From Guillardia theta CCMP2712 (lineage: Eukaryota; Protista; Cryptophyta), in contig NW_005434650.1 of assembly GCF_000315625.1 (NCBI RefSeq), forward strand, positions 745,439 through 809,438: 64,000 nt of DNA. Reading direction: 5' to 3'. The position numbers and the translations under genes are program-made. Positions 40,931 through 52,559 of the stretch are shown here, piece after piece. The notes under the pieces are model-generated. The model worked only from the letters and a program-made list of their open reading frames with translations. It made no database searches and was not told where the DNA came from. Within the stretch, counting starts at the first letter, position 1. Every line of letters starts with the position of its first letter.

Positions 40931-42878
40931 AATTCTTGTACATGTCGGATCATGTAAATAAAGTGAGATGTGAACTAAACCACCGGCTTTGCAACACAGC
41001 AATCACACTTTCTGTTCTGCTCGTTTTCATCATCAATCTAATGTCAACAGGTATGAAGGCAGAAGTTAGATGCTGCTAAGAGGATGTCCCTGCTCGAACG
41101 AGAAGGTTCCCTCCGCGTGATACCTCTGAGTAGCTCCAGCAGAAGCCATGTGCTCGGACGCGGGGAGCTGGGTGAACCAATCCCAATGGGCATCCCAGTT
41201 CTGTTATAGCAGATATGTCAAGGCAATAAACAAGAGATCTTGCACATGAACTCAAAGCCCTCAATAAATGGCATCAAACCTAGACGAGGTAAAGGGAATC
41301 TTTCTTCTTCTTGACTACGGTATCTGTTCTACATTATCCTGAATCTTCAACCACCAAGAAAAGCCTGAAAGATATGGACACACAAGCCAACTTGCACTCG
41401 CTGTTTCAACAAAGTCTCTGAAATCACCAGGTCGAAATCGCACCAATAATCAATCCGTATCATATGGCCATAGAAACCTCCATAGATAAAAAAACACTTC
41501 ATCTCATTATTCTCATTATCTCATCTGGGTTTAATTTCTATTCTGCTCTTTCATGGCCTAGCTTCATCTTGCACAGTATCATCGTCCTTTTTCCCCTTCA
41601 CTCGCATCTCTCCTCCTAGTCTCATCATCTCCCCTTCCCTCCTCACTCAGATTTCTCTTCACGACTTGTTCTCTCACCTTGGGCACTCCCGGCCTAGCGT
41701 TCGCCGGCAGCCATCCTGATGACTGCAACGCGTCTGTCAACCTCTCCAACACCATCGCGGCTCTTCGTTTGAGCTCTACCCCACCCTTCCCGCAATCACA
41801 TTTTCCCTTCTCACCAGGACCCTACCCAATTTTTACTATCATGCTTTGGCATCTTCTCGGGGGTACTTTTGCTACCCACCCCTTGGTATGGCCAATGGCT
41901 TCTCAGAGAATTGTTTCACCGGGCACTGGCCTGCAGACCTTCAGGAAGAAAACCTGTGAAACCTGGACGCACAACTAGCATTTTAAAGGCGTATCCTTTT
42001 AAAAATTCAACGGCAAATGATCTACCCATGACACCCCTGGTAATACCCAAACTCTTAGGTTATAAGGTACCGGTACTAATAGAAATAAAGGTACCATGTT
42101 GATCTTGACTTTTAGAGTTTTTGACTTGTAACGCATTACCACAAGAGACCCTATAAGTAAAGTAAGATTATAGTGGTACACATCAAAAAATTAACGCCGC
42201 TTAGCTACCTTTCGCAGATTTAGGCTAAATCTACAGAACAGCAGGTAAAACTAACAGGAAAGCATCTAAAATAGGTTGAAAGATTGTTACTTTCACCAGA
42301 TTTGTCTGCCCCACGGCGGTTGACGGCAATGTCCATGAGCAGTGTGGTGGGAAGAGATAGCGGGAAGAGATAGCAGGAGCAGATCAGAGATCAGAGAAGA
42401 GAAGAATGGATATGAGAAGCGAAGAGTGGAAAAATAGAGGTGATATCGTGCAAGATATGGAAGAGAGTGAAAGATAGATACGGTGAGAGCCACAACCATG
42501 GACTAAGACGATATATTTGTTGTTGGAACAAGGTATGCTTGACGTAAGATACATAAAGAACATAAAATATACTTGAGAGGGCAGAAGATCAAAATAAGAA
42601 TCGCCTTTGGTGGATGATGAATCGAAAGGATGTTTGACAAGGTAACGATTTAGACCGAGAAAAAAGGATATCACATCGAGAAAGGAAGAAGTTAGTGAAG
42701 CAGTCAAATCGAAATGTGAGTTTGCAATGTAGAACGGTGAATTTTCTTGAGTGCATGATTCATGCAACTGCATTGTTAGTGAATTTGTTCCAACTACCAT
42801 GGCATCTTGGAAAGTGAAATAACGGTTCAAACAGACTGTTGTGTGCCTGCGTTGGCACCTGTCCCCAAGAGGTTCAGG

Positions 42879-45121
<2,243 letters not shown>

Positions 45122-45245: not shown

Positions 45246-46507
45246 TTACGTATCGGGTTGTTCTTGTAAATGGGCTGAGGCGCCTGGACGTCGAGAAGCA
45301 CCGGATACTTGGTCATTCAACCACACAGCATGGTATGATGCCTCGTCTAGTGCCGTTTCGCTCGATGCCATTCGCAGCATCCCGTTCACATGCAGCAGCC
45401 CGACGATAGCAAGCACTGTGTTGTTTCTAAGCTGCTCCCTAGTGTCTGGCAGCTGTTTGCGCAAGGAGCAACATTCGAGGATTGATTTCAGTAAGAACTT
45501 GTCACGCGATTCGATCAAGACTGGATGGATTCGCGGGATCAAGGCAAAGATGACGATGAGAGGGATAGAAACGATCAGATCATCGACTGACTGCTCGACA
45601 AGTCACAAACCGACAGCTCTCAAGCACTCGGTACCTCGTGAGAGGCTTGCGACACGCCGGCAGCGCTCTCAGCATACCTTGTACCAAGACAAGTCAGCCT
45701 CCACCCATTCACATCATGTTTCAACCATGCAATCGTTGTTAGGATTGACGAGCTGAGAAAGATGGCAGCTGAGAAAGGAACCAGCTCGAGGATCCTCCGA
45801 GAGTCGCTGAAGACTTGGAGAAAGTCGACGCGTCCGCCTGCACTCTTGACGGGAGAGTGAGCGAGTTTGTGCTAGCAGATGGGAAGGGGCACCGGTGTAA
45901 AGGAGCTTGCGAACCCCCGGATCCCTCGCAGGGCCGAGGGGATGTCAAACATTTCTGTGATGCTGACAAGCTTTGAAAGCTCGTCGAACGTGTCGGTGGC
46001 GTTGATGTCGCCCAAGACCTGAGCACCGTCAGACAGTTTGACACATCCAACTCTCATCTCACCACTGAGCAGCCAAGGGCCTTGGCTTCCTGCACCGCAG
46101 CTACAAACTCTCCTCCTGACTCCATTCCCGCTCGCTGCAGGATGGCGTAAACAGAAGAGATGAAAAGATCGGCGATGCTCTTGTTCATGATCGACCCTCC
46201 TCTTTCCTCTTTCGTTTTGGACGGCGACGAGTCGAACATGCACAGAAAGCGATCCAAGCAGAGCTCGAGGCAGACAACTCGCGGTCGGAGGAGCCGGAGG
46301 CATTGCCGGACATCTTCTGTGCTTGCCTGCGACACATGGAAGGTCCCAAGGATGTACACGTGCGTCCTCGATGAAGGTTCGTAGAAGTATGCTGTGCTTG
46401 ACGGAAGCTCCTCCAGCCTGACTGGCATCTGTTCCCTGCTCGCAGCCGACAGAGCGACTGAAGCATGTTTCCTCGGAAGAAGCGAAGGAAAGACGCAGAA
46501 GGGACAT
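45246..46507 (-). CDS. TraB/PrgY-domain protein (TRABD-like), multi-exon; start uncertain
   Basis: VYILGTFHVSQASTEDV...VCLELCLDR; GGEFVAAVQEA...VLGD; LIESRDKFL; VLAIVGLLHVNGM. Confidence 0.85.
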
Positions 46508-46793
46508 GCGGATTGAAGCAGAAGCAAAAGTGAGAAACTTACAAGGTGGGTGGCATGCATGGGACTGCACAAGATGAGCTAAAGGAGACAAGAGAAACTG
46601 TCAGGTAGGTTAGCTACGAGGATCGAGCGAAAGGAAAGGGACGAATGAATATCAATGAAATGGCAGCGAGATGATAGAGGAGGAGGAGGAGGAGGAGGAG
46701 GAGGAGGAGGAGGAGGAGGAGGAGGAGGAGGAGGAGGAGGAGGAGGAGGAGGAGGAGGAGGAGGAGGAGGAGGAGGAGGAGGAGGAGGAGGAA

Positions 46794-46893
46794 NNNNNNN
46801 NNNNNNNNNNNNNNNNNNNNNNNNNNNNNNNNNNNNNNNNNNNNNNNNNNNNNNNNNNNNNNNNNNNNNNNNNNNNNNNNNNNNNNNNNNNNN
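46794..46893. other. Assembly gap (100 N) next to a (GAG)n tract (46676-46793)
   Basis: N run. Confidence 1.
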
Positions 46894-47472
46894 TTGTACC
46901 ATGCATTTGAATGTTTAGTCATGCTTTTCTCATCATAGTCACATTGTTAGTTTCAATATCAATGCTTTTATTTCTCTGAGCTGTCTCCAAATTTGAGCCA
47001 ATAAAATCGCTTAAAGCTCATTTATACGCCGCTGCCCCTAGAAAATTCTTGCGAGGGTTTCCCTATGTTTTTTGGTTAGACGGACTTTTAAATATTGCCA
47101 AATACAGTAATTTAGCAATTTTATCATCCAATTCCCCTAAAATGCCAGAATATGCCCTACTACACACCCCAGTTTATAGTGCAAACGCTTGAGACTCTCA
47201 ATTAGCACCAAGTAAGGAGTAGCAGGAGGAGGAGGAGGAGGAAGCGAAGGGAAGGGGGGAAGGGAGTTGAAGGGAGGGAAAGGGGGTGGGGTGAGGTGAA
47301 AGGAAGGGTGGATGCAGCGAGGGAGTGGGGTGGGTGGAAGGGAAGGGAGGATCACAGGAAGATGGGAATTTTCACCCTTTTTTTCGTGGATCCTGCCGAG
47401 AACTTTTACAGGAGGGAAGGGCGGGCGAGAGGGCGAGATGAGACGAGACGCGAGGGGAGCGAAGAGAAGAAG

Positions 47473-50300
47473 ATGGAGGAGGACGATGAGAGGGAAAGAA
47501 AGGAGATGGAAAAAGAGGCAGGGCAGGGCGGGTTCGTGGATTAGATATGTGGCAATGGTGGTTTGACGTAAATCCCCTGCCTGACAGGTGAGAGGAGAGA
47601 GACGCATGCTCGCAACAGGGGAGGCCGAAGAGAAACAGAAGAAGAGACGAGCAGAGAGCGCGGGCGGGAAGGATGTTGGCTTCATGTGCATTTTCTGCAA
47701 GTCTGTCTTCTGGGTCGACGGGCGGGAGAATGCGCGCTCCAAGTTCTGTCCCCTCTGTGGAAGCAAGCTAGCACCAGACTCGAGGGTTTGGTTCTCTCGG
47801 ATTTCCAAGGAGGAGGATGAGGCCATTACCAAGCGAATGTGCGAAAGCTTCTCTAAGAACTCTGCCCGTCTCTCCTCGCTCTGTCCCGACCATTCCCAGC
47901 GTGAAGTCAAATATCCACCCAAGACAGTCTGCATAAGCCAAGAGCCTGCTCAGACGCTCCCCAAGTTTTGCGAAGTTTGCGGCTACCAGTCTGATGAGGT
48001 GAGAACAGCAGGGCTCTCTGCAAGGAACTAAATCTTAAACCCATCACGCGATCTCAGGTCCACTGCTCTTCGTGTACAAGCGTATTCCACAAGCGATGTC
48101 TGTTTATACCGGAAGCCTTCAAACCTTCTCACGGGTCAGATGTTCTTGGCATCCAGCCGCTCTCCTTTTTGCACTTACTCACTTTCTGTCAGTTGGCGAT
48201 GTCACTCTTGTATGCACGACGCTATGATCCAGCGAAAGTTTTCACCTCTGCCAGCTTTGCGGCGGAGCAAAACCAAGTTAGCGAATGTTTCCAAGTTGTG
48301 CTCGTCCTGCGGGTTAGTATTGCTTGAACTCACCGTCACCCTCAAAGTTGTTCCAGATACTATGAGCTCGAAGCCTTGAATTGTGATGTCTGTTGTCGGT
48401 GGTTTTGCTACGGTTGCATGTGCATCAGTCAAGGAATCTTACCACCCAATGGATGGAGTTGTTCGGGTGAGAGGCATCTGAGAATGGTGACTGACCATGA
48501 GCTCTTGGACTGACTCTCGATTCGTCAGAATGCGTGGGGCAACGTGAATATGATGAGGATCTTGTCAAGAAGCTCCAAGTTTCCCGTTCAAGGTTCGCAG
48601 CAGGATTGATGTCAAGACGAGAGCGGGACGGATTCTCGCAGGTGATTCTCTTAGATTTGGATTCGAGTGCGAGATTGACGGGAAGCGTTGCAGTTGGTGT
48701 TTGACCTGTCTTGTGGCTGCTTCTGGGAGGAGTGGAAGAAGAACGTATGTTGCTTGATCGATGACAGCAAGAAATGCCTCGAAGATGGAGCTCTCACTCC
48801 GATCTTACCGTATCATGCGCTTCACTACCCCATCGACAAGTCAATGATCCGAAGGATTGCAGAAGTTTATTCCAAAGTTTGCTTCGAGAAGGCTCGGAAC
48901 CACTTGCTCTCGAAGGCGACAGCTGAGGGCCAGCAGTCGCAGAATGTTGTGGATACAGATCAAATCAAATCTTGGAAGGTTGAAAAGATCGCGAGAAAAG
49001 TGGACGAGGTTTCGGGGGCTTCCTCTTCACGCCTGCGAATAGGATACATGAGCTCTGATTTCGTTGATCACCCTACGGCAGACCTGATTCTAAGAGCGCT
49101 CCTGCTACATGACAAAGATCGTTTTGATGTTTATTGCTACTCCATCACTAACCATGCTAACTCCGAGTATCGTCGGAGATTGAAGCACCACATACCTAAC
49201 TTCAAGAATCTTGCAAAGAAGGACTCAGACGACAAGTATGGCAGTGTGTCGTCGGCTTACACTGAGGTGCTGCAGGTGTGCAGAGATCATCGCTCAAGAT
49301 GGGATCCACATCCTCATCAACCTCAACGGGCACACTGCAGGAGATCGCAATGGGATCAGTTCATTGCGTCCTGCTCCAATCCAGGTGGTTTACTTGGCAT
49401 ATCCTGGAACATCTGGAGCTGATTATATTGATTTCAACGTGAGGGCAAGTGCTGATGGTTCCGTGAGTGACATATCGTCAGGTTGTGGACGATCATGTTT
49501 GTCCGCCAGAGCATCGCGAGTTTTACAGCGAGAAGCTGATTAGAATGCCACACTGCTACCAGGTCAACTCGTTTAACGATCTCTACCAAGACGTGCTGAG
49601 GTCAGAGACGCTCCCTAAAAGACGCGATCACTTTCTGCCAGACAAACCTGCAGTTGTCTTGTGCAACTTCTGCCGCCTGGGAAGAATCTCTCAGGAGCTC
49701 TTCGATGCATGGCTCAGGATCATGCGGAGAGTGGAAGGAAGCATTCTCTGGCTCTACAGTCATCCCCGAGCGGCAGCTAATCGTCTCAGGGACTATGCTC
49801 GCCGTCAAGACTTCCCGACCGATCGGATCATCTTCGCTCCTCCCTGTAGCCCCAAGTTGCAGCACATGAAGCGTCTTACTCTCGCAGACCTCTACCTCGA
49901 CACTCTGGTGTATAACGGACACACCACCGCAAGCGATGTGCTGTGGGCTGGTGTTCCCATAGTAACAGTGAAGGGAAGCAACTGGCCCTCGCTGGTTGCA
50001 ACATCTCTTGCTCGCAGCGTTGGGTTGCCAGAGATGGTTGCGACATCATTGGAGGAGTACGAGGAGATGGCCGTTGATCTCGCCAGCAACCCTGAGAAGC
50101 TGCAAGGATTACGCTCGAAACTTTGCAGAAATCGACTGACGCAACCTCTGTTTGACAATGAGCGTTGGGTGAGAAGCTTTGAGAACGCCTTAGAAACGAT
50201 ATGGAAGACCTGGGAGAATGGAGAGCAACTAGTCGACGTCAGGCCCCAAGACTTTGGTGAATCCGATTGCTCAAAGAAAATAGCAGAAGAGTTTAAATGA
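47473..50300 (+). CDS. Zinc ribbon + PHD + ADD-like finger fused to an OGT-type GT41 catalytic region, no TPRs, multi-exon
   Basis: Zinc modules: CIFC..CPLC; CEVC|HCSSC..FHKRC|WRCHSC; CSSC|CDVCCRWFCYGC..WSC|SEC. GT41 motifs: RLRIGYMSSDFVDHPT, INLNGHTAG..RPAPIQVVYLAYPGTSGADYID, ADLYLDTLVYNGHTTASDVLWAGVP. Confidence 0.85.
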
Positions 50301-51263
50301 TTACAGAGACATTCACAGACCGTATGGCACATATTGCATTCGCACATTACTTCATTGTAATAAAACAATGCTATTCCTTCCTACATATACAGAGTCGCAA
50401 GAGATTTGAAAATTGCGTGCTCTTTAGTTGAGGAGAAGGGTGGGATTGTACTTGGTGGTGACAGCTCTGTCCTCAGTCTGTCCGACGAAAACCTGTCTCA
50501 TCTTGCTGCCCATACCGAGGTCAATCTGGGCAGTATCATTGTGGGCCTGCCGTGTAGAAGGTCAAACACGACAACCTCGAGCACAGGGAAAAATCGATTC
50601 TTTGGCATGTTCACATCATGTTGCCTTCGAAATTACATTACAAATCACACATAAATACAATCAGACAATAATTCCGATCGTTCTGATTTACACGTGGATT
50701 ACAAGTTTCTGATTAGACCATGTTCATTAGAACATTTGGCTCAAGCGATGAGGAAACGATTCAAGACTTGCAATGGATACTATTACACTCTCAACCACAA
50801 CATCATCAGACAAGAATACACAAATGACAGTTGTGGCTCTAGTCATTGTGGCTCTAACGGATCCCTATCATATCTAAACTCAGGAAAGAGCGCGACACGT
50901 AAAATACGGATTACTCAGTTAAAATGTTGCCCGTACAGCTGCAAAAGTGACGATGGAAAGGATAACTCAACATGAATAATGCAGCGGATGGTGATTCGAT
51001 GATGCAAGATGAGCAGCGGTGTGTATTGATGTGATGCAAGATGAGCAGTGGTGTGCATGGACGTGGCTGTCACATAAATTGTTTCTTACCGCGTTGAACA
51101 ACATAGACAGCATGGCGTTTGTCTCTTCGACGTCCGCGTGACCCCTCGTCCAATATAACTACCAAGTTTCGGAAGTAACGGTCAATTGCATTTTTAACAG
51201 AAAAAGAAACCAAAAAGTCCGTTACAGTCCGTTAGTGACAAACGAAAAGCGAAGAGGCGCGCT

Positions 51264-52559
51264 ATGGTTGGGACCTTTAGTAAGGGAGCAGCAGCCATCG
51301 CGATTGTCGGAGGGCTGGTGCTCATCGTGCTGTCTGCTACTTCGTTTTCGCATAAGGTGGGTGGAGTTGTCCTTGTCTTCTCATCATCTTAACACTTCTG
51401 ACGGCTCCTTCATCATATTCCTTTTTCCAGCGCGAGGCAGCTCGAAATGAGTTGTTAGGATCCTTGCCTGGTTACACCTGCTTCAGTCCTCCATGCACTT
51501 TCGGGAACGGCCTTCCTCCACCAAGCGTTAGTTTCCACTTGACCCAACAGCTTCCTCTTGGACCCCATCCAATGACCACAGAAGCTATCAGCAAGTCTAG
51601 CGACGCTATGTCCTTGGCTGATTCTGTAGAAGACGTGGAAAGGGCGGATAGGGGGAAAATCGATCATGTGAGTTGTGCTTGTCTTCTGATTTCACTGTTT
51701 GTGAAAAAATATTTGTAGTTGGAGGACAATATCGATGATGTGCAGAGCTCTACGTCGGACAACATGAAGTCATCAAGAATAGCACTTTGGAAAGAGATTG
51801 GAAAACTAAGGCGAAAGATCATGGGATACAAAAAGCGTCTCATGGATGTCAAATCTCAAATGATGGCTCGTGACAATTACTTAGACACCAGGATGTCTGC
51901 TCTAGACAATTCTATCAAGCGATCGCAGGTCTCGATGGAGCGAAGGTTGAATGATATCACTGTCAAAGCCAATGTCATACAGCATGAAGTTGGTCCTCCT
52001 GGCGCACCAGGTGAAGATGGAAAGGATGGGCCCCCAGGACCTGCAGGTTATCCTGGCCCTGTCGGCGAGCGAGGGCCCCCAGGGAACATCGGACCAGCCG
52101 GGCCAAGAGGATACGATGGACGGGATGGTATCCCTGGAGGGGTGGGACCGAAGGGTGATATGGGCTTGCCCGGTCCTGAAGGTCCTCAAGGCGCTCAGGG
52201 TACGAGGATGTTGCAGCCCATGCTGAGCATCTAATATTGGCCTTAGGTGAAGGAGGCCGACGAGGCCCCATGGGTTTGTTGGGACCAGAAGGTCAGCCGA
52301 TTGATGGTCAGCAAGGTCAAGCGGGCCCTCGCGGTCCTCCAGGATATGCAGGAGTGTCTGGAGCAGAAGGTCTGACAGGACAGTCGGTCGCAGGAGGTAG
52401 AGGACGTGCTGGTCTGGCTGGACCTGCAGGCGCAGCAGGAGGTAAGAATCCTTTCTCCCATATGCTAATCTGTTCGGAATGCTGATCTGTTCGGTAGCTT
52501 CTGGACCGGCTGGACCGGCTGGACAGTGGGGACGTTGGGGATATAATCAGAAAGATTAG
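51264..52559 (+). CDS. Second type II membrane collagen-like protein (TM, coiled coil, Gly-X-Y), multi-exon
   Basis: [27 protein letters not shown]; coiled coil [19 protein letters not shown]; [19 protein letters not shown]...; ends [12 protein letters not shown]. Confidence 0.8.

What the first reader, a model, noticed from the sequence alone, without database searches (positions are those of the whole stretch)
47473..50300. TPR-less O-GlcNAc-transferase-like enzyme fused to PHD and ADD-like fingers: a candidate chromatin reader-writer
Seen: the spliced N-terminus has a CxxC..CxxC ribbon, a C4HC3 PHD (47967-48211) and an all-Cys finger CDVCCRWFCYGC..WSCSEC (48296-48540). An OGT-type catalytic region follows (LPYHALHYP, SSDFVDHPT, NGHTTASD), with no TPR repeats. 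Known: OGT/SEC/SPY use N-terminal TPRs for substrate selection, PHD and DNMT3/ATRX ADD fingers read the H3 tail, and DNMT3 ADD contains CCRCFCxxC..WxCxxC. Inference: the TPRs have been replaced by histone readers, giving a nucleosome-targeted glycosyltransferase, an architecture I do not recognise as described.
Basis: partly seen in the sequence, partly recalled or inferred. Interest (0 to 1): 0.8.

Follow-up and report, generated by a model that had tools for sequence, protein, structure and literature searches.

The report
PHD-finger O-GlcNAc-transferase of cryptophyte algae
This is a real, expressed gene of the alga Guillardia theta in which an O-GlcNAc-transferase-type sugar-adding enzyme carries two histone-reader-type zinc fingers where the usual substrate-selecting repeats should be, which suggests, but does not prove, an enzyme aimed at chromatin.

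Summary
Window 47606-50300 (+) is one 8-exon gene of 778 codons. RNA-derived contigs from three studies skip all seven predicted GT..AG introns exactly, so fingers and catalytic domain lie on one mRNA. The order is zinc ribbon, a C4HC3 PHD finger, an all-Cys PHD-like finger, a linker helix, then a GT41 catalytic domain with no TPRs and no intervening domain.

Two paralogues in the same genome (Guillardia theta) have the same order, one as a single intronless ORF. About 25-30 clusters among 1.84 billion representatives carry the module. Every long one checked has GT41, and all named ones are cryptophytes. Some members add chromo-like or Tudor domains, and one adds a SET domain.

The catalytic domain is closest to animal OGT, not SPY. 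The whole clade has Arg where human OGT has the catalytic Lys842.

The ADD label is not supported: finger 2 matches generic PHD fingers, with no GATA-like part. The ATG at 47473 is not the start; 47606 is.

Histone binding, sugar donor and activity remain inferred. Text searches of the paper library found no description. I rate it a new variant of a known kind.

The parts
46514..46545 (+). 3' end of a 5' UTR exon, seen in one run. It is joined to 47588 across a 1042-nt GT..AG intron that holds a (GGA)n run and an assembly gap. An in-frame TGA lies at 46531-46533.
   Evidence: The loose end of the X5 contig matches 46514-46543 exactly. Sequence read.
47588..47998 (+). First coding exon. The acceptor AG is at 47586-47587 and the start codon ATG at 47606. 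A basic KQKKRR patch follows the start.
47687..47758 (+). N-terminal zinc ribbon, CxxC-x16-CxxC. It is conserved in paralogue L011 and in P0007, P0121, P0123 and P0124.
   Evidence: Weak Pfam zinc-ribbon hits (E 1e-3); family sequences.
47969..48211 (+). PHD finger 1 (C4HC3), interrupted by introns 47999-48057 and 48135-48192.
   Evidence: Ligand pattern. Pfam PHD E 1.3e-3 on the 25-aa exon 2 alone. All 8 ligands plus the Trp are invariant in the family. The paralogue model matches the BHC80 PHD at Z 7.4, rmsd 2.5 over 60 residues.
48299..48533 (+). Finger 2, an all-Cys (C4C4) PHD-like finger, interrupted by introns 48313-48356 and 48467-48528.
   Evidence: All 8 Cys are invariant in 11-12 members. 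Pfam PHD is the commonest hit (7 of 12 members, best E 1.5e-4) and there is no ADD hit. The AF2 model has pLDDT 84 and its best fold matches are generic PHD fingers.
48534..48641 (+). Family-specific linker, a predicted helix that follows finger 2 directly.
   Evidence: Conserved GQ-x-YD ... DGFSQ motif; helices in the AF2 models.
48694..49438 (+). GT41 N-terminal catalytic lobe (exons 6 and 7, intron 49236-49275). The residues equivalent to His498 and His558 are kept.
   Evidence: Pfam PF13844, E 2e-20 and 1e-21. Aligned to Drosophila and human OGT. Residue table.
49482..50300 (+). GT41 C-terminal catalytic lobe (exon 8) with the stop codon. There is no intervening domain. Arg stands at the positions of human Gln839 and Lys842. 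H920, T921, T922 and D925 are kept.
   Evidence: Pfam E 2e-48, profile positions 355-541. Human OGT scores 159 bits, against 113 for XcOGT and 72 for SPY. Residue table.

Best explanation
Shown:
- The window encodes one expressed 778-aa protein of the cryptophyte Guillardia theta.
- It belongs to a small clade of OGT/SEC-type GT41 glycosyltransferases; every named member is a cryptophyte.
- In this clade the N-terminal TPR superhelix, the substrate selector of OGT, SEC and SPY, is replaced by a zinc ribbon and two PHD-type fingers. These are joined by a short helix straight onto the first helices of the catalytic domain.

Inferred:
- The fingers dock the enzyme on chromatin. The most likely target is the N-terminal tail of histone H3, because finger 1 resembles the BHC80/AIRE/CHD4 class that reads unmethylated H3K4.
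- The GT-B catalytic domain then transfers a sugar, most likely GlcNAc from UDP-GlcNAc, to Ser/Thr of histones or of proteins bound next to them.
- In effect proximity set by a reader domain replaces TPR-based substrate choice.
- The clade-wide Arg at the place of Lys842 is assumed to keep the charge that stabilises the diphosphate leaving group.
For: One gene, one mRNA: single contigs from three studies skip all seven introns exactly, and the frame is intact.

Same order in paralogues:
- L011 has zinc ribbon, PHD, Cys finger and GT41 in one intronless 1650-aa ORF.
- L012 has PHD, Cys finger and GT41 in one ORF, with a Tudor-knot plus PHD ORF just upstream.

Family:
- All 16 zinc ligands are invariant.
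- A profile of the finger module against 1.84 billion representatives gives only about 25-30 whole-module clusters.
- Every long one checked has GT41.
- The 14 finger-bearing C-lobes form one clade at 100/99 support. The next set out (98/92) holds animal OGT and a TPR-GT41 of G. theta.
- Named members are Guillardia, Teleaulax and Geminigera.

Reader-like fold: the finger 1 model matches BHC80 (Z 7.4), CHD4 PHD2, Rco1, AIRE PHD1 and TRIM24/33/66.

Chromatin partners by fusion:
- A chromo-like N-terminus in P0004 (19.2 bits, below the cut-off of 25.1).
- Tudor-knot (25.4 bits) plus PHD in L012.
- A Tudor domain in P0189.
- A SET domain (29.9 bits) in the same continuous ORF as finger 2 and GT41 in L028/P0278.

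Enzyme:
- The best solved relatives are human and Drosophila OGT.
- H498, H558, H920, T921, T922 and D925 are kept.

Precedent:
- The TPRs select OGT substrates, and an OGT-nanobody fusion redirects OGT by proximity (PMC8386111).
- Plant SEC O-GlcNAcylates the SET domain of ATX1 (PMC6166131).
Against: - No binding or activity data exist.
- The residue at human Lys842, called the key catalytic residue (PMC4683255; PMC8386111), is Arg in every clade member that has the C-lobe. It is Lys in 94 of 113 other GT41 hits. Gln839 is Arg as well. Activity or donor may therefore differ.
- PHD fingers also bind non-histone partners, and Pfam scores for the fingers are at or below the cut-off in several members.
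- The fold matches are for a paralogue's fingers, not for the spliced window protein, and have Z below 8, which the tool says can reflect a common arrangement.
- No GH84 O-GlcNAcase was found in the genome, so a reversible cycle is not evident.
Confidence: 0.6

Rival explanations
1. The architecture is real, but the fingers are not histone readers. They bind a non-histone nuclear protein, another partner or nucleic acid, or are only structural. The enzyme then glycosylates substrates unrelated to nucleosomes.
For: Pfam PHD scores are weak (19.2 bits on exon 2, 17.7 in L011). Finger 2 has no close solved relative (best Foldseek E 0.05). PHD fingers with non-histone ligands appear among its matches, for example PHF2-VRK1. 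The zinc ribbon has no assigned function.
Against: Finger 1's best structural matches are all histone H3 tail readers. Relatives repeatedly gain other chromatin modules: chromo-like, Tudor-knot, Tudor and SET.
Confidence: 0.2
2. The GT41 domain of this clade is not an O-GlcNAc transferase. Either it is a pseudo-enzyme that only binds a nucleotide sugar or a peptide, or it uses another donor, as SPY uses GDP-fucose.
For: The catalytic Lys842 position is Arg and Gln839 is Arg in all clade members. Lys is kept in 94 of 113 other GT41 hits. No OGA was found in the genome.
Against: Arg keeps the positive charge. His498, His558, His920, Thr921, Thr922 and Asp925 are all kept across members that have diverged to under 60% identity. 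This argues for selection on a working nucleotide-sugar site. Similarity to OGT (159 bits) far exceeds that to SPY (72 bits).
Confidence: 0.17
3. The finger exons and the GT41 exons belong to separate genes or transcripts, and the fusion is an artefact of reading ORFs side by side.
For: None found. The only weakness is that the RNA evidence is assembled contigs, not single reads. The one raw-read RNA run (X20) is a 3'-end library that hardly covers the gene.
Against: Contigs from three independent studies join all eight exons with exact GT..AG junctions. Paralogue L011 carries the same domains in one uninterrupted ORF. So do more than ten environmental and cryptophyte proteins.
Confidence: 0.02

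Closest known systems
Metazoan OGT / plant SEC (GT41 O-GlcNAc transferase)
   Same: Both catalytic lobes are present, and human and Drosophila OGT are the best solved relatives. His498, His558, His920, Thr921, Thr922 and Asp925 are kept. The clade sits next to animal OGT in the C-lobe tree.
   Different: It has no TPRs. It has no intervening domain: Pfam profile positions 201-355 are absent, and about 90 residues are missing relative to human OGT. Arg stands in place of Lys842 and of Gln839. The N-terminus is made of zinc fingers.
SPINDLY (GT41 protein O-fucosyltransferase)
   Same: GT41 fold, no intervening domain.
   Different: Much lower similarity: 72 bits against 159 for OGT on the C-lobe, and 41 against 62-64 on exon 7. 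SPY has TPRs.
PHD fingers that read unmodified H3K4 (BHC80/PHF21A, AIRE PHD1, CHD4 PHD2, TRIM24)
   Same: The C4HC3 pattern with the Trp two residues before the last CxxC. These are the best structural matches of the finger 1 model (Z 5.5-7.4, 50-60 residues aligned, rmsd 1.4-2.9).
   Different: Here the finger is fused to a glycosyltransferase. Binding was not tested, and Z stays below 8.
ADD domain of ATRX / DNMT3 (GATA-like finger plus all-Cys PHD)
   Same: Finger 2 is also an all-Cys PHD-type finger with an F-C-x-x-C centre.
   Different: There is no GATA-like finger before it and no Pfam ADD hit. DNMT3A and ATRX ADD structures rank 42 and 46 in the fold search, behind ordinary PHD fingers.
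Engineered proximity-directed OGT (nanobody-OGT fusion)
   Same: A binding module fused to OGT sets which proteins are glycosylated, by proximity (PMC8386111).
   Different: That construct is man-made. This would be a natural, lineage-wide version that uses chromatin-reader domains and lacks TPRs altogether.

Membership tests
GT41 glycosyltransferase (OGT/SEC type) | Pfam PF13844 match above the gathering score, covering both catalytic lobes | tested here: met
   Exons 6, 7 and 8 score 72.8, 77.2 and 165.4 bits against a cut-off of 25. Profile positions 74-201 and 355-541 are covered.
GT41 glycosyltransferase (OGT/SEC type) | Catalytic lysine (human Lys842) | tested here: not met
   It aligns to Arg in the window and in every clade member with a C-lobe. 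It is Lys in 94 of 113 other GT41 hits.
GT41 glycosyltransferase (OGT/SEC type) | Other active-site and UDP-binding residues (His498, His558, His920, Thr921, Thr922, Asp925) | tested here: met
   All are conserved in the window and in the clade.
GT41 glycosyltransferase (OGT/SEC type) | N-terminal TPR superhelix | tested here: not met
   No TPR family hit on any exon. A TPR-bearing GT41 does exist elsewhere in the genome (L014).
GT41 glycosyltransferase (OGT/SEC type) | Transfer of GlcNAc from UDP-GlcNAc to Ser/Thr | not testable with these tools
   Needs an enzyme assay.
PHD finger (finger 1) | C4HC3 ligand pattern with canonical spacing and the conserved Trp | tested here: met
   The pattern is read across exons 1-3 and is invariant in 11 members.
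PHD finger (finger 1) | Pfam PF00628 at the gathering score | tested here: inconclusive
   The window could only be scanned exon by exon: 19.2 bits on the 25-aa exon 2, against a cut-off of 24. Relatives pass: L012 24.7, P0002 28.5, Teleaulax P0153 31.6. L011 does not, at 17.7.
PHD finger (finger 1) | PHD fold | tested here: met
   For paralogue L011, the AF2 pLDDT is about 85 and the best match is the BHC80 PHD at Z 7.4. The spliced window protein itself was not folded.
PHD finger (finger 1) | Binding of a histone tail | not testable with these tools
   The complex prediction gave no verdict. Peptide binding assays are needed.
ADD domain (ATRX-DNMT3-DNMT3L), for finger 2 | GATA-like C4 finger packed against an all-Cys PHD finger | tested here: not met
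   The all-Cys PHD-like finger is present. No GATA-like finger lies in the 29 residues before it: Pfam GATA matches 1 of 12 members at E 0.3.
ADD domain (ATRX-DNMT3-DNMT3L), for finger 2 | Match to ADD profiles or structures better than to generic PHD fingers | tested here: not met
   No Pfam ADD hit. Foldseek ranks DNMT3A at 42 and ATRX ADD at 46 (E 0.44-0.47), behind BHC80 at E 0.05.

The most novel reading that the evidence does not exclude
Cryptophytes have a dedicated chromatin glycosylation system. Reader-writer enzymes recognise a histone-tail state through PHD, chromo or Tudor modules and put a sugar directly on nucleosomal histones. In some lineages this is physically coupled to SET-domain lysine methylation. 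That would be a natural histone glycosylation mark with its own targeted writer.
Probability: 0.25. Interest if true: 0.85.

Novelty: new variant of a known kind. Interest (0 to 1): 0.6.

Why it matters
In animals and plants OGT reaches chromatin only through partner proteins. From my own knowledge, not checked here: whether histones themselves are O-GlcNAcylated is disputed.

A natural enzyme family in which the TPR substrate selector is replaced by histone-reader-type modules, and once joined to a SET domain, is a fusion-type argument that GT41 enzymes act at chromatin. It offers a compact system, two fingers plus a catalytic domain, for three tests:
- whether a reader domain alone can set OGT specificity;
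- whether Arg can stand in for the catalytic Lys842;
- whether histones are real substrates.

At least one public gene model of a paralogue (GUITHDRAFT_68991, 493 aa, GT41 only) omits the fingers. The architecture may therefore be under-represented in domain databases.

Tried and rejected
- The step of joining the exons into one protein and searching or folding it was left out. Folds were made on the intronless paralogue L011 instead.
- Read laying was given 3,951 letters.
- Start at ATG 47473: rejected.
- 5' ends: the three runs show three different sequences before 47588. One maps to 46514-46545. One maps to another contig, C81, and is probably an assembly chimera. One is not in the assembly. 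The true 5' end stays open.
- Raw RNA reads of X20 are 3'-end tags of the neighbouring minus-strand gene and hardly touch this gene.
- Complex prediction with the L011 fingers and G. theta histone H3 residues 1-40 gave no verdict, score 0.00. This is no evidence either way.
- ESM Atlas feature search of the finger region gave no usable hit.
- The word-based search restricted to the finger region found only five to six proteins each time. The profile search was needed.
- Literature searches for PHD with GT41/OGT, Guillardia with O-GlcNAc, glycosyltransferase with chromodomain and cryptophyte, and K842R found nothing relevant.
- A GH84 O-GlcNAcase was sought in the genome and not found. This does not prove absence.
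- The ADD reading was rejected.
- The SPY reading was rejected on score.
Full report
**1. What is in the sequence**

The region is eukaryotic, with short GT..AG introns. Reading 47000-51500 and checking frames gives eight exons on the + strand:
- 47606-47998
- 48058-48134
- 48193-48312
- 48357-48466
- 48529-48641
- 48694-49235
- 49276-49438
- 49482-50300

Together they make 778 codons. The seven introns are 40-62 nt long, and none is a multiple of three.

The protein has, in order:
- a CxxC-x16-CxxC zinc ribbon (47687-47758);
- a C4HC3 PHD finger (47969-48211);
- an all-Cys C4C4 finger (48299-48533);
- a short linker;
- a GT41 catalytic domain.

Scanned exon by exon, exons 6, 7 and 8 match Pfam Glyco_transf_41 at E 2e-20, 1e-21 and 2e-48. 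Profile positions 74-201 and 355-541 are covered. The metazoan intervening domain is therefore absent, and no TPR family is hit anywhere.

I left out the step of joining the exons for a search or a fold.

**2. One transcript**

Logan contigs of three runs from three different studies each contain one record that skips all seven introns at exactly the predicted GT..AG sites. Each record runs from 47586/47588 to at least 50325, with no mismatch or gap.

Upstream of 47588 the runs differ:
- One 5' piece maps to 46514-46545. It gives a 1042-nt GT..AG intron that contains a (GGA)n run and an assembly gap. It also has an in-frame TGA at 46531-46533.
- One maps to another contig and is probably an assembly chimera.
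- One is not in the assembly.

The first in-frame ATG is 47606.

**3. Organism and paralogues**

The genome has 87.1 Mb in 669 contigs. A paralogue's product is identical to GUITHDRAFT_68991 of Guillardia theta CCMP2712. The genome gives more than 40 GT41 matches. These include a TPR-bearing one (L014).

Two paralogues are 57% identical in the C-lobe and repeat the window's architecture:
- L011, 130 kb away on the same contig, holds zinc ribbon, PHD, Cys finger and GT41 in one intronless ORF of 1650 aa.
- L012 holds PHD (24.7 bits), Cys finger and GT41 in one ORF. Just upstream is an ORF with Tudor-knot (25.4 bits) and a further PHD (27.6 bits).

The public model of L012 is a 493-aa protein with GT41 only.

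**4. The family elsewhere**

Word searches found environmental proteins with the same order: P0002, P0004, P0005, P0007, P0047 and P0121-P0124.

In an alignment of 11 members that are only 33-52% identical to the reference, all eight ligands of each finger are invariant. So are the Trp before the last CxxC of finger 1 and several finger 2 residues.

A profile of the finger module was searched against 1.84 billion representatives:
- It gave 1815 hits. Most of these are ordinary PHD proteins matching finger 1 only.
- Only about 25-30 clusters match the whole module, 15 of them at E 1e-30 or better.
- Every long one checked carries GT41.

Named members of these clusters come from Teleaulax amphioxeia and Geminigera cryophila, both cryptophytes.

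A maximum-likelihood tree of the C-lobe puts all 14 finger-bearing sequences in one clade at 100/99 support. The window is sister to the cluster that holds the Geminigera fragment. The next set out, at 98/92, contains animal OGT and G. theta's TPR-GT41.

**5. What the fingers are**

An AlphaFold2 model of both fingers of L011 has pLDDT of about 85 over the fingers.

Finger 1 aligns best to these:
- the BHC80 PHD (Z 7.4, rmsd 2.5, 60 residues);
- ZMYND8;
- CHD4 PHD2;
- Rco1;
- SP100;
- TRIM24/33/66;
- AIRE PHD1.

These are H3-tail readers, and several of them read unmethylated Lys4.

Finger 2 was modelled alone, with pLDDT 84:
- It again matches generic PHD fingers best (BHC80 E 0.05; Rco1, AIRE, UHRF1, ING2).
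- DNMT3A and ATRX ADD structures come only at ranks 42 and 46.
- Pfam gives PHD for 7 of 12 members and no ADD family.
- No GATA-like finger precedes it.

Finger 2 is therefore an all-Cys PHD-like finger, not an ADD domain.

**6. Chromatin context by fusion**

Relatives add other chromatin modules:
- a chromo-like N-terminus (P0004; 19.2 bits, below the cut-off, but over the full profile length);
- Tudor-knot plus PHD (L012 and its 1360-aa relative P0002);
- a PTM/DIR17-type Tudor domain (P0189);
- on a 55.6-kb environmental contig, the end of finger 1, a divergent finger 2, the family linker, GT41 with the clade's Arg-Arg signature and a SET domain (29.9 bits), all in one continuous ORF.

This is the strongest indirect argument that the family works on chromatin. 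It parallels plant SEC, which O-GlcNAcylates the SET domain of ATX1 (PMC6166131).

**7. The enzyme**

All three GT41 exons are closest to human and Drosophila OGT:
- C-lobe: 159 bits for human OGT, 113 for Xanthomonas OGT and 72 for SPINDLY.
- Exon 7: 62-64 bits for human and Drosophila OGT, against 41 for SPINDLY.

Exon 6 aligns from its start to the first helices of the Drosophila catalytic domain. The fingers therefore replace everything that normally precedes the catalytic domain.

His498, His558, His920, Thr921, Thr922 and Asp925 are kept. His558 is otherwise found, among the 113 other hits, only in the two animal OGTs.

The position of Lys842 is described as the key catalytic residue (PMC4683255; PMC8386111). 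It is Arg in the window and in all clade members, against Lys in 94 of 113 other GT41 hits. Gln839 is also Arg. Arg keeps the charge, so I expect activity, but this is inference. Donor and rate may differ.

No GH84 O-GlcNAcase was found in the genome.

**8. How it most likely works**

Shown: one protein with ribbon, two PHD-type fingers and an OGT-type GT41 domain, conserved as a clade whose named members are all cryptophytes.

Inferred:
- The fingers bind a histone tail, most likely H3 with unmethylated K4 for finger 1.
- They hold the catalytic domain at nucleosomes.
- There it glycosylates histones or neighbouring proteins.
- Proximity replaces the TPR asparagine-ladder mode of substrate choice (PMC8386111).

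The engineered nanobody-OGT is the nearest functional analogue.

A complex prediction of the fingers with H3 1-40 gave no verdict and counts neither way.

**9. Novelty**

Four text searches found no description of a PHD-GT41 protein, nor of this family in cryptophytes. The parts are all known. The combination, the loss of the TPRs, the Lys-to-Arg change and the restriction of all named members to cryptophytes make it a new variant of a known kind.

I put:
- the architecture at about 0.97;
- chromatin targeting at about 0.65;
- GlcNAc transfer at about 0.5;
- the combined best explanation at 0.6.

Noticed in passing
L028:3896-8158 (ENA contig of 55.6 kb, protein P0278): One continuous ORF joins the end of a PHD finger, a divergent finger 2, the family linker, a GT41 domain with the clade's Arg-Arg signature and a SET domain (Pfam 29.9 bits). 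This is a glycosyltransferase fused to a histone-methyltransferase-type domain. The organism is unknown and the DNA is GC-rich.
   Followed up: partly
L012:5162-5971 (G. theta contig C23): An ORF with Tudor-knot (25.4 bits) and a PHD finger (27.6 bits) lies 40 nt upstream of the PHD-GT41 ORF. The 1360-aa relative P0002 has the same parts in one protein, so this is probably one gene. The public model GUITHDRAFT_68991 covers only the GT41 part.
   Followed up: partly
G000, whole genome: There are more than 40 six-frame matches to the GT41 C-lobe in an 87-Mb genome, a large expansion of the family. Most of the checked paralogues show no TPR in the ORFs scanned.
   Followed up: partly
window 50334-50547 and from 51090, minus strand: A convergent neighbour gene on the minus strand has its poly(A) site at 50334, 34 nt from the stop codon of the GT41 gene. 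It has an intron at 50548-51089. The raw 3'-tag reads of run X20 pile up here.
   Followed up: no
window 45872-46591, minus strand: Minus-strand ORFs that I took from memory for a TraB-like protein (not scanned) overlap the 5' UTR exon of the GT41 gene (46514-46545). The two genes thus seem to overlap head to head, and one RNA contig runs on for 3 kb beyond the junction.
   Followed up: no
window 46655-46893: A long (GGA)n microsatellite is followed by a 99-N assembly gap, inside the 5' UTR intron. GGA-rich low-complexity sequence continues at 47225-47480 and attracts unrelated RNA contigs.
   Followed up: no
window 42860-45120, plus strand: A multi-exon protein kinase gene (CDK/MAPK-like N-terminus, GxGxxG and HRDIKPEN motifs) with a long Ser- and Pro-rich tail.
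   Followed up: no
window 51719-52500, plus strand: ORFs with long collagen-like Gly-X-Y repeats (GPPGPAG and similar) follow a coiled-coil-like N-terminus. This is unusual for an alga.
   Followed up: no
G000:C81:38994-39022 (L015): The 29 letters that precede exon 1 in the RNA contig of run X1 match a different contig of the genome exactly. This is probably an assembly chimera, but trans-joining was not excluded.
   Followed up: partly
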